Shown in pieces: positions 7,905 through 13,191 of a stretch of DNA of 64,000 nt. Both the position numbers and the translations under genes were made by a program. Numbering within the stretch: position 1 is the first letter of the stretch; each line of letters opens with the position of its first letter. The stretch comes from Magallana gigas. Lineage: Eukaryota. Where the stretch lies: the NCBI RefSeq assembly GCF_963853765.1, contig NC_088860.1:2914001-2978000 (forward strand), written 5' to 3'. Under the pieces are notes generated by a model. That model worked only from the letters and a program-made list of their open reading frames with translations, made no database searches and was not told where the DNA came from.

Positions 7905-10900
7905 AGTGAGTCAGTAACTAACCTAATAAGTGTTTTGTTTTCTCGAGGACAATTAAGCGACATATTTATTCACAAATAGCGATGATTAAGGCACAGCCAT
8001 ATACAAGATGCCTAACATCTCGTCCAATTTAACTCATTTAAACTCTTCAAAATTTTCAATCTCACCTTTCAAATACTCTTTAAAAATCTTTGCTTCACCC
8101 ATGTTTACCTACAATGTTTTGTTGCTATTCAATTTTAAATGTTTTCTCCCTTTTCTCTGCAGAGATTTGAGCAAATTTCGATGCTGCCATTTTGTTCTGC
8201 TCCAGACAAAACAATGTGACGTCAATATTCTAAGGGCAACTACTCTAATTTTAAAGAATTTCAAAGGGCAACTACTCCAAATACTTTAAGAACTTACGGC
8301 ATGCGGTTTATGTATTAAATACTATGAAATGTCGAAATGAGTAAGCGAAGCGTTGACCAATGACGGCCATATTGCCTAATATTAATTCTCACAGAACAAA
8401 TATAGAGATATATGAGGCAATCTCGTGCTATGTTTAAACCAATGAAAATGTGACATTTCAGTCCAAGGGAAAACAAATAGGATTATATCCTGAGTACCCA
8501 AACTCTGTCACCATAAGCAGAAAACATCCCGCTTTTCTGTGGGTTTTTTTTTTTTTTTTTAGTGGTTTGTGACAGTTGCAATCACTAGATATAACCTGAA
8601 AATTATAATTCATTAAATTATCAGCAAAAATAATTTTAATTTGATTAAAAATAAGCCCACCGAATATGACGTTTACCACACATGCTTATCATAACCTATG
8701 AACCTAACTCCATCACCCACGTCATGCTTTATGATATGCCAGGAAATGAAGACACTTTGACAATTTAGTTTAAACTCAATTTGTTAAAGTTGTGATACTG
8801 CAATTTATGATAAGTAAAAATGATGCATACAATTTAAATGGTATATAATTTCATCGAAATGAAAAGATTGCCAAAATAAAAAATGAGTCCCTGTACCAAC
8901 AAACACAAAGACCTTTTCAGAATGTGTGGGTGTCATTTGGACTGAAAAAAATGTATTAATACATGTACCCTAAATCAAAAATGTATTACATGTGAAATGT
9001 TTAATCTTGACCTCTTTAAAAATGATTGATCAATGTTAATGATTGAATGGGCCCACTTGTCAGAGATATCGATGTTTTAGTGCTCCTGTGAAAAATTGTC
9101 AGCCGATTTAACGCAATTAATGGTGTATAGAATGAACAAGGTGTAATCTAAATATTTTTAACACGTTCTTGAATTAAATTGTTGCAAGTTGTTGACATTT
9201 GATTAAAGATATTTGAGATGCAAAATAATGACGTCATAACTGAGCTAATTTTCAAATGGCTAGGAGTTTCCCGAAAATGGCGGTGTTAAGGAAGTGAAGG
9301 AGTTAATGGGCTATGCGATGCATGTAAAACACTGAATAAAAAGTGAAAATCTTATAAATAAAATATGCCATGGTTTTGTTATTATATTCCCACAAGGGAA
9401 GTTATCTTACAGTATCCCAGAAATGTCCTCTTTATATTTTTTATATGAAATAACAACATCCAGTTAAGTTACAAAGTGAGCTTTTGTGTGGATTGGAGAC
9501 AGGAAACTTCTGTATGTCATGTTGATAATTTTGTTTGTCTTGGTTGATCAAATTTTGTTGTACATTGTCCTCTGTTATGTCAACAAGAACTTGGTAATTA
9601 ATGGATTGAAATAGTATGCTAAAATTATAAGGGGGTAGTCTCTGTAGTCTCTGTATTTTTCCATCAATAATGATAGGGAATCAATGAACAGTAGACTAGT
9701 TCTGAGAACATGTCACAAGTGAAGACTTCTCACAGGGAACCTCAGAAGAGCTGACCACTAGTATACCTAGTTTATCCTAAAATAGCTTACAGAACTGTCA
9801 GAATGTGACTATGTCTCAGGTACTCCGATGTTACAACAATTTCTGTAACTTCACAGGGCTCACAATAGATAAATGTAATATTTGTACAATTTAGGATATG
9901 TATGTCCATGGCGGACAAATGGGATGAAATGGGAGGCTCATACTTCTTACTGCAAGTTTATCTCCTTGTTTGGTTTTTTAAGGAAAGAAGAAGCGAAGCA
10001 CAAGTACAGAAGGAGGAAGGGAATGATTTCTTCAAGAAGCAAGAATACGAATCGGCCATTAAGTCATACAGCCGTGCCCTCAAATTATGTCCAAAAGATT
10101 TTGTCAAGGACAGGGCCATTCTATTCTCTAACAGGGCAGCATGTCGGATGAAAAAGGTTAGCACAGATGAAAATCATAGATGTACTTTTGATATTTATTC
10201 ATTCATTTAGAATACTGTTTACAAGGCTATTTTGTCCCAGGGGGTTTTTTCCCACCCTTCTTCACTTGCAATCAGTTTCACTTTGTGTTGAATTAGCCCA
10301 AACACAGTTGTGTTAAAAGAGAGGTAATTGAGACTTTTTAATTCGTCCAGTCTTATACTGGCCTGTTGACAATTGAAGTGAAAGGGGAAAAAATAAGATG
10401 AGGGAAAATATTTCCCTTTGTACAGTATTTGTTCTGCATATTTTGAACACACATATTTTTCAATTAGAGTGAGAATGAGGAAGCCATCTTAGACAGTAAC
10501 AAAGCCTTGGAGCTTCACCCTCAATATCTGAAAGCGTTGCTGCGGCGGGCGGAGCTATATGAGAAGGTGGACAAACTGGAGGAGGCGCTAGCGGACTACC
10601 AGAAGGTGGTGGAGATGGACCCCTCACAACACCCAGCCCGGGCAGCATGTTTGGTAAGTCACAACACCCAGCCTGGGCAGCAAGTCTGGAAATTCACAAC
10701 ACCCAACCCTGGCAGCATGTCTGGTAAGTAACCATACCCAGCCCAGGCAGTATGTCTGGTAAGTCACAACACCCAGCCTGTGCAGCATGTCTGGTAAGTA
10801 CAAGGGGGAATCTCCAACTGCTGTAACAATCAACTGGTTGGGTATACACATGGTTTCATCACAACACCCAGCCTGTGCAGCATGTCTGGTAAGTACAAGG

Positions 10901-13191
10901 GGGAATCTCCAACTGCTGTAACAATCAGCTGGTTGGGTATACACATGGTTTCATCACAACACCCAGCCCGGGCAGCATGTCTGGTAAGTACAAGGGGGAA
11001 TCTCCAAGTCCTTATAACATTAGATGATGGGGGAAATGCATGGTTTCATCACAACACCCAACCAGGGCAGCATGTCTGGTAAGTAGAAGGGGGAATCTCC
11101 AACTGCTATAACAATCAGCTGGTTGGGTATACACATGGTTTCATCACAACACACAGCCCAGGCAGCTCTGGGAAGTAGTCAAAGGTTCTGGGAGGGTTGT
11201 ATCTGGTGATCAGTCTAGGGGAGGGAGATAATCCGCCCAATACCCAGCCCAGGCAGCTAGTCTGCCAAGTATGTGTTTAAGAGTCTCTCAATTCTTAACC
11301 CATGGTGCCACATATGATAAGTCGGAATAGGGAGTGGAGAAGGTGGACAAACTGGAGGAGGCGCTAGCGGACTACCAGAAGGTGGTGGAGATGGACCCCT
11401 CACAACACCCAGCCCGGGCAGCATGTTTGGTAAGTCACAACACCCAGCCTGGGCAGCAAGTCTGGAAATTCACAACACCCAACCCTGGCAGCATGTCTGG
11501 TAAGTAACCATACCCAGCCCAGGCAGTATGTCTGGTAAGTCACAACACCCAGCCTGTGCAGCATGTCTGGTAAGTACAAGGGGGAATCTCCAACTGCTGT
11601 AACAATCAACTGGTTGGGTATACACATGGTTTCATCACAACACCCAGCCTGTGCAGCATGTCTGGTAAGTACAAGGGGGAATCTCCAACTGCTGTAACAA
11701 TCAGCTGGTTGGGTATACACATGGTTTCATCACAACACCCAGCCCGGGCAGCATGTCTGGTAAGTACAAGGGGGAATCTCCAAGTCCTTATAACATTAGA
11801 TGATGGGGGAAATGCATGGTTTCATCACAACACCCAACCAGGGCAGCATGTCTGGTAAGTAGAAGGGGGAATCTCCAACTGCTATAACAATCAGCTGGTT
11901 GGGTATACACATGGTTTCATCACAACACACAGCCCAGGCAGCTCTGGGAAGTAGTCAAAGGTTCTGGGAGGGTTGTATCTGGTGATCAGTCTAGGGGAGG
12001 GAGATAATCCGCCCAATACCCAGCCCAGGCAGCTAGTCTGCCAAGTATGTGTTTAAGAGTCTCACAATTCTTAACCCATGGTGCCACATATGATAAGTCG
12101 GAATAGGGAGTGGATGTTATATTAATCCTGGATGTCCTATTGCATTGTAAAATACACTTGTTTATTCTGTATATTTTGATATAAATGCATTACAGAACTG
12201 TAAAGCACAAAGCTATACCTAATTCACAAAAAGATGGTTTTTTAATTGTTTTTGGTCATTGGTTTATGGTCAGGGAACTTCTGAGGGATTCATTCTTGTT
12301 TTGCAGAGATTACCAGAGCAGATAAAAGAGAAAAACGAAAAGATGAAAGAAGAAATGATTGGTAATGAATTAGATAAAAATCATGAAAACTAAAGATTCA
12401 TTTTGTATATTCTTGCCTATAGGTCAGATTTTAGGACAAGTAAAAAAAAAATCACAGTCCTACTGGCAGTAATTTTTTCACAGCATAGATGTAAACAAAC
12501 AAAATAAATTCATTTTTTAACACTGATACATTTTCAACATTTGACTTATAATCCTAAATGCACAAATTTGAATTTAAGTATGATAGATGCACAAAAAATT
12601 GTTCTCTATAAAATAAAAATAAGGTTCATCATATTATCCCAAGACACCATTACAGACTGTGTTATACTGTCTGCAAAATTGGGTCTTGAAAGTCAAAATA
12701 TTTACTGTTTCCCTGAAGAACTGTTATAGGTGGTGATCAAATATTTAGTGTATACAGGTAATTATTGTAAGATGGTGGCCTAAAGGGCGATCAATCACTC
12801 ATATCTCAGGTCCAAGATGACACGTACCAGTATCTACCAACATGTTTACAGATATACTTACATCTGTCAGTCCTTTGATTAATTATTGGCCTATACAGAT
12901 ATACTTACATCTGTCAATCCTTTGATTAATTATTGGCCTATAACCAAGATGCATCAGTCTGCAGATAAGCATTAATGAGTTTAAATTCTTCTTTTAAATT
13001 GTTAAAAATATTTTTGAGATATTTCAGCAGTTACTCCATGTTACTTTCTCTTATTTTCAGGAAAACTGAAGGAGTTGGGTAACATGGTGCTTAAGCCCTT
13101 TGGACTCTCTACAGAAAATTTTCAGCTGAATCAGGACCCCAACTCGGGGGGCTACAATATCAACTTCAAGCAGGGCCCCTCTTCTTCCTGA
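6956..13191 (+). CDS. TTC1: Tetratricopeptide repeat protein 1 (about 254 aa), 5 coding exons
   Basis: Exons 6956-7174, 9983-10156, 10468-10653, 12307-12361 and 13061-13191, all with GT-AG introns and a continuous frame. There is an acidic N-terminus, three TPRs ([24 protein letters not shown]; [10 protein letters not shown]; [24 protein letters not shown]) and the TTC1-typical C-terminus [21 protein letters not shown]. Confidence 0.93.
7801..7930. repeat. Long near-perfect inverted repeat (54-bp perfect arms, 10-nt loop) in TTC1 intron 1
   Basis: 7807-7860 is the exact reverse complement of 7871-7924. The loop is ggcgaggcga. Confidence 0.93.
10561..12114 (+). repeat. 776-bp tandem duplication containing the 3' half of TTC1 exon 3 and a 35/95-bp donor-site minisatellite
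   Basis: 10561-11338 recurs at 11337-12114. The identical ORFs 10624/11400 and 10882/11658 are offset by 776. One substitution was seen by eye (11288 T versus 12064 A). Confidence 0.93.

What the first reader, a model, noticed from the sequence alone, without database searches (positions are those of the whole stretch)
10561..12114. 776-bp duplication in TTC1 creates a possible in-frame 99-nt cassette exon of nearly one TPR length
Seen: the second copy begins ..gtcggaatAG|GGA GTG GAG AAG GTG GAC.. and ends ..GCA TGT TTG|GTAAGT. Positions 11331-11429 are therefore AG/GT bounded, 99 nt, phase 0-0 and stop-free, encoding [33 protein letters not shown]. The duplication junction has only GA microhomology. 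Inference: inclusion would add a 33-aa quasi-TPR after TPR3, an example of repeat-protein expansion by partial exon duplication. The acceptor lacks a polypyrimidine tract, so inclusion may be rare.
Basis: partly seen in the sequence, partly recalled or inferred. Interest (0 to 1): 0.72.

Follow-up and report, generated by a model that had tools for sequence, protein, structure and literature searches.

The report
Young silent duplication in oyster TTC1
An oyster's TTC1 gene carries a very recent 776-base tandem duplication of half an exon plus the repeat-rich start of the next intron; it is real but not present in every oyster, and all RNA seen splices straight over it, so it looks like an ordinary silent structural variant rather than a new exon.

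Summary
Window 10561-11336 and 11337-12112 are head-to-tail copies, 775 of 776 bases identical, joined with a 2-bp GA microhomology. 11331-11429 is AG/GT-bounded, 99 nt, phase 0-0 and stop-free.

The gene is the oyster TTC1 orthologue (5 coding exons, 254 aa). The duplication copies the last 93 nt of coding exon 3, its donor, and an intronic minisatellite built from that exon end plus donor.

Short-read contigs of run X1 break exactly at the two positions a k=31 graph must break if the junction exists. They show about 1.7-2x depth inside the repeat. An independent DNA run (X5) and an RNA run (X15) run straight through those positions at 1x. So the duplication is real but polymorphic or private.

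No RNA evidence supports the cassette. Only 10653>12307 joints appear in one RNA contig set and one raw-read run. About 20 transcript-derived proteins examined all read ...ARAACL|RLPEQ. The proposed acceptor is poor: pyrimidine fraction 0.38, against 0.62-0.88 at the four real acceptors. Its rank is 105 of 117 AGs in the intron.

One caveat: none of the RNA samples is shown to carry the duplication.

Verdict: a silent young intronic duplication, of low interest. Another agent found donor-site minisatellites elsewhere in this genome.

The parts
6956..7174 (+). TTC1 coding exon 1 (Met1-Lys73)
   Evidence: RNA loose ends at 9980 read the end of this exon; the sequence was located and the CDS assembled
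9983..10156 (+). TTC1 coding exon 2 (TPR1 and helix A of TPR2)
   Evidence: GT..AG joint 10156>10468 in an X15 contig and 10 X21 reads; Pfam TPR hits
10468..10653 (+). TTC1 coding exon 3 (helix B of TPR2, TPR3, first 8 residues of the C-terminal helix); authentic donor TTG|GTAAGT at 10653/10654
   Evidence: Joints 10156>10468 and 10653>12307; Pfam TPR_1 at 40.2 bits; AlphaFold helices 152-164, 168-181 and 186-225
10561..11336 (+). Copy 1 of the 776-bp tandem duplication (last 93 nt of exon 3, the donor, the minisatellite and about 80 nt of unique intron)
11337..12112 (+). Copy 2 of the duplication, wholly inside the intron 10654-12306; junction 11336|11337 with GA microhomology (11337-11338 = 12113-12114)
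   Evidence: X1 contigs end at 10590 and 12114, depth inside is 12.4-12.9 against 5.8-7.7 outside, and only X1 covers the junction bin
10624..11260 (+). Minisatellite derived from the exon-3 end plus donor. It has 35-nt units (10624-10803), then 95-nt units (10764 to about 11158), then decayed units. It carries six CTG|GTAAGT pseudo-donors after the authentic one. The copy-2 image lies at 11400 to about 12036
   Evidence: contigs of X5 and X15 also hold it
11331..11429 (+). Proposed 99-nt pseudo-exon (GV plus a copy of Glu163-Leu193); not seen in any RNA
   Evidence: for anatomy; and for absence from RNA
12307..12361 (+). TTC1 coding exon 4
   Evidence: Joints 10653>12307 and 12361>13061
13061..13191 (+). 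TTC1 coding exon 5, including the stop at 13189-13191
   Evidence: Joint 12361>13061; CDS

Best explanation
This is a very young, non-fixed 776-bp tandem duplication inside the oyster TTC1 gene. One breakpoint lies in coding exon 3 and the other in unique intron sequence. The joint has 2 bp of microhomology, so it arose by end joining or template switching rather than by unequal exchange between minisatellite units (inferred). The first copy keeps exon 3 and its donor intact, so the whole second copy lies inside the intron 10654-12306. It is removed together with that intron, and the TTC1 mRNA and protein are unchanged. The duplicated exon fragment has a good donor but no usable acceptor, so it stays a silent pseudo-exon. 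The many downstream copies of the donor stay silent because the most upstream donor is the one used, as in the human F7 intron-7 minisatellite.
For: The duplication is present in reads. X1 contigs end at 10590 and 12114, the exact k=31 branch points that a second path into 10561 and out of 12114 requires. Contigs inside the repeat have depth 12.4, 12.6 and 12.9, against 5.8-7.7 in the flanks. Only X1 covers the bin holding the junction, at 3.05, which equals a 58-nt junction unitig at depth 6 (that last step is my inference). The duplication is absent elsewhere. X5 contigs 9900-10793 and 11899-12437, and X15 contig 11899-12335, run through both points at single depth. Splicing is canonical. 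An X15 contig and 7 X21 reads join exon 3 to 12307. Four of those reads carry the T10651C allele, and three lie wholly inside the duplicated part and are ambiguous between 10653 and 11429. No 10653>11331 joint was reported. All transcript-derived TTC1 proteins examined read ARAACL|RLPEQ. The acceptor is weak: Y fraction 0.38, longest pyrimidine run 2, rank 105/117, against 0.62-0.88 and runs of 5-9 at the four real acceptors. The first AG after the only branch-point-like motif gives a 108-nt exon with an in-frame TAG. Upstream-donor dominance over identical pseudo-donors was shown experimentally for F7 IVS7 (PMC1557585).
Against: No junction-spanning contig was listed explicitly; 71 records were not shown, so presence in X1 rests on break points and depth. 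X1 matches the reference haplotype over 3.4 kb and may be the assembled animal or a relative. The RNA samples are not shown to carry the duplication; X15 apparently does not. Absence of the cassette joint therefore does not test splicing of the duplicated allele. X21 was sampled at about 1 read in 100, with only 7 exon3-exon4 junction reads, so inclusion below roughly 15-30% would be missed even in a carrier.
Confidence: 0.78

Rival explanations
1. In carriers the 99-nt segment is included at a low level. This would give a 287-aa TTC1 isoform with an extra helix-B-plus-stub unit after TPR3.
For: The frame, the AG/GT bounds and a donor identical to the authentic one are all present, and the 93 exon-derived bases may carry the exon's own enhancers. 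A TTAAC branch-point-like motif lies 31 nt upstream of the AG. No carrier RNA was tested.
Against: The acceptor has no pyrimidine tract (0.38, below the intron background of 0.47). A nearer AG at 11320-21 would be met first and would give a stop codon. No such joint or protein was seen.
Confidence: 0.1
2. The duplication is an assembly artefact and the real genome has one copy.
For: Two other data sets (X5, X15) show a single copy. The one difference between the copies (11288 T) is not seen in X1, where a single contig at double depth carries A.
Against: X1 shows the exact branch points, doubled depth and coverage of the junction bin. At 776 bp the repeat is short compared with the long reads expected behind a 29-contig, 564-Mb assembly (for the assembly figures; the technology is my assumption).
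Confidence: 0.05
3. The duplicated allele is mildly harmful. Occasional use of the copied donor with one of the nearby AGs (11321, 11334) would give frameshifted or stop-containing transcripts that are degraded.
For: AGs at 11320-21 and 11333-34 give a 108-nt exon with a TAG or a 95-nt frameshifting exon. Such products would be hard to see in steady-state RNA.
Against: All of these acceptors are as poor as the proposed one (Y fraction 0.31-0.44), and no such joints were seen.
Confidence: 0.05

Closest known systems
Internal (intragenic) tandem duplications spanning an exon-intron boundary, as discussed under intron gain by tandem genomic duplication (review PMC3443670; Hellsten et al. 2011, PMC3265369)
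   Same: It is a head-to-tail duplication inside a gene that copies splice signals. The transcript is unchanged because the outer pair of sites is used and the duplicated material is spliced out.
   Different: No new intron is created here. The copy simply lengthens an existing intron by 776 nt. The published cases duplicate exonic AGGT to make both sites of a new intron.
Human F7 intron-7 37-bp minisatellite whose first unit spans the exon 7 / intron 7 boundary (PMC1557585)
   Same: A minisatellite is built from an exon end plus its donor. The authentic donor is followed by near-identical pseudo-donors that stay silent, and RNA uses the most upstream site.
   Different: The oyster array has two unit sizes (35 and 95 nt). 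Here it has also been duplicated as a block together with 63 further exon bases. Scanning-type donor choice has not been tested in molluscs.
Alternative exons born by tandem exon duplication
   Same: The copied coding sequence sits in the downstream intron, in frame.
   Different: Only half the exon was copied, without its acceptor, and no alternative use is seen. The copy is days-old in evolutionary terms (0-1 differences) and is not fixed.

Membership tests
Tandem segmental duplication (structural variant) | Two adjacent head-to-tail copies with near-identical sequence | tested here: met
   775/776 identical, spacing 776
Tandem segmental duplication (structural variant) | The junction is present in sequencing reads and not only in the assembly | tested here: met
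   X1 shows contig breaks at 10590 and 12114, 1.7-2x depth inside, and coverage of the junction bin. This is indirect, because no junction contig was listed.
Tandem segmental duplication (structural variant) | Segregating (absent from some individuals) | tested here: met
   X5 and X15 contigs pass both break points at single depth
Cassette (alternative) exon | AG...GT bounds and an open frame compatible with the neighbouring exons | tested here: met
Cassette (alternative) exon | An acceptor with a pyrimidine tract comparable to used acceptors | tested here: not met
   Y fraction 0.38 against 0.62-0.88; rank 105 of 117 AGs in the intron
Cassette (alternative) exon | Junction reads or transcripts that include it | tested here: inconclusive
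   None in X15, X21 or the transcript-derived proteins, but the carrier status of those samples is unknown or negative
TPR repeat (34-residue helix A - helix B unit) | A full-length match to a TPR profile above its cut-off | tested here: not met
   The 33-aa peptide matches TPR_1 positions 14-33 only, at 21.7 bits against the 27.8 cut-off. It holds helix B of TPR3 and 8 residues of the C-terminal helix.
TTC1 orthologue | Full-length similarity to named TTC1 proteins, including the C-terminal tail after the three TPRs | tested here: met
   A 253-aa near-identical oyster transcript protein hits TTC1 of Saccostrea (78%), other molluscs and vertebrates at E-values of 1e-66 or lower over the full length. 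The window's CDS is 244-249/254 identical to same-cluster members.
Exon-end/donor minisatellite with silent pseudo-donors (F7 IVS7 type) | The first unit spans the exon-intron boundary, downstream units keep the donor, and only the first donor is used | tested here: met
   The array starts at 10624 inside exon 3. There are seven GTAAGT per copy. All joints leave from 10653.

The most novel reading that the evidence does not exclude
In oysters that carry the duplication, the pseudo-exon is spliced in at a low level. This would yield a TTC1 with a fourth TPR-like unit, a repeat-protein expansion caught while still polymorphic. More broadly, this locus shows three nested rounds of tandem duplication (35 nt, 95 nt, 776 nt), each of which copies the same donor site. 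That would fit a mutational bias toward exon 3' ends in this genome.
Probability: 0.08. Interest if true: 0.5.

Novelty: new member of a known kind. Interest (0 to 1): 0.2.

Why it matters
As it stands this is an ordinary young structural variant with no detectable effect on the transcript. It mainly warns annotators not to call the in-frame fragment an exon. It has some value as a natural experiment. The allele places a perfect copy of a used donor and half of its exon 776 nt downstream, so carriers could show how strictly oyster splicing demands a proper acceptor and prefers the upstream donor. This locus, together with similar arrays noted elsewhere in the genome, could also feed a study of why exon-end/donor sequences are so often amplified in oysters.

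Tried and rejected
1. The search of protein representatives with the 61-aa TPR exon was a poor choice. Giant multi-TPR proteins filled all 150 rows and no TTC1 was returned.

2. The protein-atlas search with the 41-aa C-terminal exon gave only an unnamed 39-aa cluster.

3. The search for homologous proteins with the exon ORF found only unnamed exon-sized fragments. I stepped up through a 150-aa fragment to a full-length query.

4. A 286-aa cluster member looked like the cassette isoform by length. It is the normal protein with the two TGA stops read as Trp, so I rejected it.

5. I used the look-up of encoding contigs with the neighbouring single-exon TRIM-NHL protein, hoping to fetch other assemblies of this region. 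It returned only a 2.7-kb transcript contig.

6. Gao and Lynch 2009 (PMC2791625) is not held.

7. I did not fold the 287-aa isoform, because a spliced sequence has no reference and I did not type it.

8. I considered unequal crossing-over between minisatellite units as the origin and rejected it. Both breakpoints lie outside the array, and 776 is not a multiple of 35 or 95.
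Full report
**Observation.** The window holds two head-to-tail copies of 776 nt, at 10561-11336 and 11337-12112. They are identical at 775 positions; the one difference is 11288 T against 12064 A. There is no shared sequence to the left of the copies. To the right, two shared bases (GA) form the junction microhomology.

The second copy is preceded by ...ggaatAG and begins GGAGTG|GAGAAGGTGGAC. It reaches ...TGTTTG|GTAAGT at 11429/11430. So 11331-11429 is AG/GT-bounded, 99 nt and stop-free. 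When placed between 10653 and 12307, it keeps the frame to the normal stop, giving 287 instead of 254 residues. The junction and the repeat units occur nowhere else in the 564-Mb, 29-contig assembly.

**The gene.** RNA joints and the sequence give a five-exon coding model on the + strand: 6956-7174, 9983-10156, 10468-10653, 12307-12361 and 13061-13191. The product is 254 aa.

Exons 2 and 3 carry TPR motifs. A near-identical 253-aa protein from oyster transcript assemblies matches proteins named tetratricopeptide repeat protein 1. Hits include Saccostrea echinata at 78% identity, many other molluscs, and vertebrates at E-values of 1e-66 or lower.

An AlphaFold model of the normal protein has mean pLDDT 78, with values above 94 across the TPR domain. 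It shows helices 152-164 (A of TPR3), 168-181 (B of TPR3) and a long helix 186-225.

**What was duplicated.** The copied segment starts 93 nt before the end of coding exon 3, at Glu163-Leu193. It includes the authentic donor TTG|GTAAGT. It then runs through an intronic minisatellite and about 80 nt of unique intron.

The minisatellite is itself derived from the exon end plus donor. It has 35-nt units from 10624, inside the exon, to 10803. These are followed by 95-nt units (the 35-mer plus 60 nt) up to about 11158, then decayed units. Each copy carries seven GTAAGT: the authentic donor and six CTG|GTAAGT pseudo-donors.

Contigs of two other data sets (X5, X15) hold the minisatellite too. It is therefore older than the 776-bp event.

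Both breakpoints of the 776-bp event lie outside the array, and 776 is not a multiple of 35 or 95. I therefore infer microhomology-mediated joining or template switching, rather than unequal exchange between units.

**Is the duplication real?** I laid four runs on 9900-13300.

- **X1.** This is the best holder, with no differences from the window in any listed piece. One contig ends at 10590 and another at 12114. In a k=31 de Bruijn graph these are exactly where unitigs must stop if a second path enters at 10561 and a second path leaves after 12114. Contigs inside the repeat have depth 12.9, 12.6 and 12.4, against 5.8-7.7 in the flanks.
- **Junction bin.** Only X1 covers the bin containing the junction. 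Its mean of 3.05 is what a 58-nt junction unitig at depth 6 would give. That last step is my inference, because the tool did not list the contig.
- **X5.** This is an independent DNA study. One contig runs from 9900 to 10793 and one from 11899 to 12437. Both pass the break points, at single depth throughout.
- **X15.** This RNA run, which also holds unspliced sequence, likewise passes 12114 in one contig.

The duplication is thus present in reads of one sample and absent from two others. It is either polymorphic or private to the reference lineage.

X1's double-depth contig carries A at 12064 without a bubble. X5 and X15 also carry A there. So the T at 11288 is either a change after the duplication in the assembled haplotype or an assembly error. 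Either way the event is very recent.

**Is the pseudo-exon used?** The only exon-3 joints seen are the following:

- 10653>12307 in an X15 contig;
- four X21 reads showing the same joint with the synonymous T10651C allele;
- three X21 reads reported as 11429>12307. The bin depths show that these begin well inside the duplicated part, so they are indistinguishable from 10653>12307.

No 10653>11331 joint was reported. About 20 transcript-derived TTC1 proteins of this and a sister oyster were examined. All read ARAACL|RLPEQ. A 286-aa member that looked promising is the normal protein with the two TGA stops read as Trp.

The weakness of this test must be stated plainly. None of these RNA samples is shown to carry the duplication. 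X15 apparently does not. X21 was sampled at about 1 read in 100.

**Splice-site anatomy.**

| Site | Pyrimidine fraction (-20 to -5) | Longest pyrimidine run |
|---|---|---|
| Four used acceptors | 0.62-0.88 | 5-9 |
| AG at 11329-30 | 0.38 | 2 |
| Intron background | 0.47 | not measured |

The AG at 11329-30 ranks 105th of 117 AGs in the intron. One branch-point-like TTAAC lies 31 nt upstream. However, the first AG after it is 11320-21, and using that one would give a 108-nt exon with an in-frame TAG. The fragment therefore has a proven donor but no credible acceptor.

The silence of the downstream donors matches the human F7 intron-7 minisatellite. There, functional pseudo-donors identical to the authentic one do not compete with the most upstream site (PMC1557585).

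**Would the insert be a TPR?** Alone, the 33-aa peptide matches Pfam TPR_1 positions 14-33 only, at 21.7 bits against a cut-off of 27.8. On the model it consists of:

- the last two residues of helix A3;
- the whole of helix B3;
- the loop;
- the first eight residues of the 40-residue C-terminal helix.

Inclusion would cut that long helix after two turns. It would then ask the stub HPARAACL plus GVEK to act as a helix A. In a B-A register this is nearly one repeat length (33 against 34), so the idea is not absurd. It remains untested, because I could not fold the spliced isoform by reference.

**Comparison with known kinds.** This is an intragenic tandem duplication across an exon-intron boundary that leaves the mRNA unchanged, because the outer splice sites are used. 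The literature on intron gain by tandem duplication treats the related case in which duplicated AGGT creates a new intron (PMC3443670; PMC3265369). Here an existing intron is merely lengthened. The underlying donor-site minisatellite is of the F7 IVS7 type. Another agent of this scan reached the same reading for a different oyster gene and reported that such arrays are common in this genome.

**Verdict.** The variant is real, young and not fixed. The cassette-exon reading is unsupported and made unlikely by the acceptor, though it has not been formally tested in carriers. Interest is low.

Noticed in passing
window 4652-5047: A 42-nt unit is repeated 8.6 times, and each unit ends in ...AATGATTC|GTAAGT. 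The first unit follows an ATG-started open stretch (MAAYGNIELISDALSNLPVTNDS). This may be a second exon-end-plus-donor minisatellite in the same window; no RNA check was made.
   Followed up: partly
window 12847-12940: There are two tandem copies of a 47-nt unit in the next TTC1 intron. One X5 contig skips one copy (joint 12845>12894), so this small duplication is also polymorphic.
   Followed up: partly
window 10283-10334: A short stretch in TTC1 intron 2 has several-fold higher depth in all four runs, with loose ends leading into many different sequences. It is probably a dispersed repeat or small mobile element.
   Followed up: no
window 830-2848: An intronless 672-aa RING / B-box / NHL (TRIM-like) gene lies upstream of TTC1 on the same strand. 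An identical product is encoded on a 2.7-kb transcript contig of a public run.
   Followed up: partly
window 10518-10651 and 13092-13197: The RNA run X21 carries a divergent TTC1 haplotype with many exon-3 differences. One is 10633 C>T (Pro to Ser, the HS variant also seen in transcript-derived proteins). Another is the synonymous 10651 T>C, which turns the authentic donor context into the CTG|GTAAGT of the pseudo-donors.
   Followed up: partly
window 20116-20414 and 46159-46965: Two further tandem arrays (101 nt x3 and 177 nt x4.5) have units that contain donor-like GGTGAGT or GGTGAAGTAAG. I did not examine their relation to exons.
   Followed up: no
proteins P0244, P0361, P0370, P0373: Many transcript-derived TTC1 entries in the protein collection run past the true stop, because the two TGA codons after ...GPSSS were translated as Trp. 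Their lengths (286-346 aa) are artefacts of the gene caller's code.
   Followed up: yes
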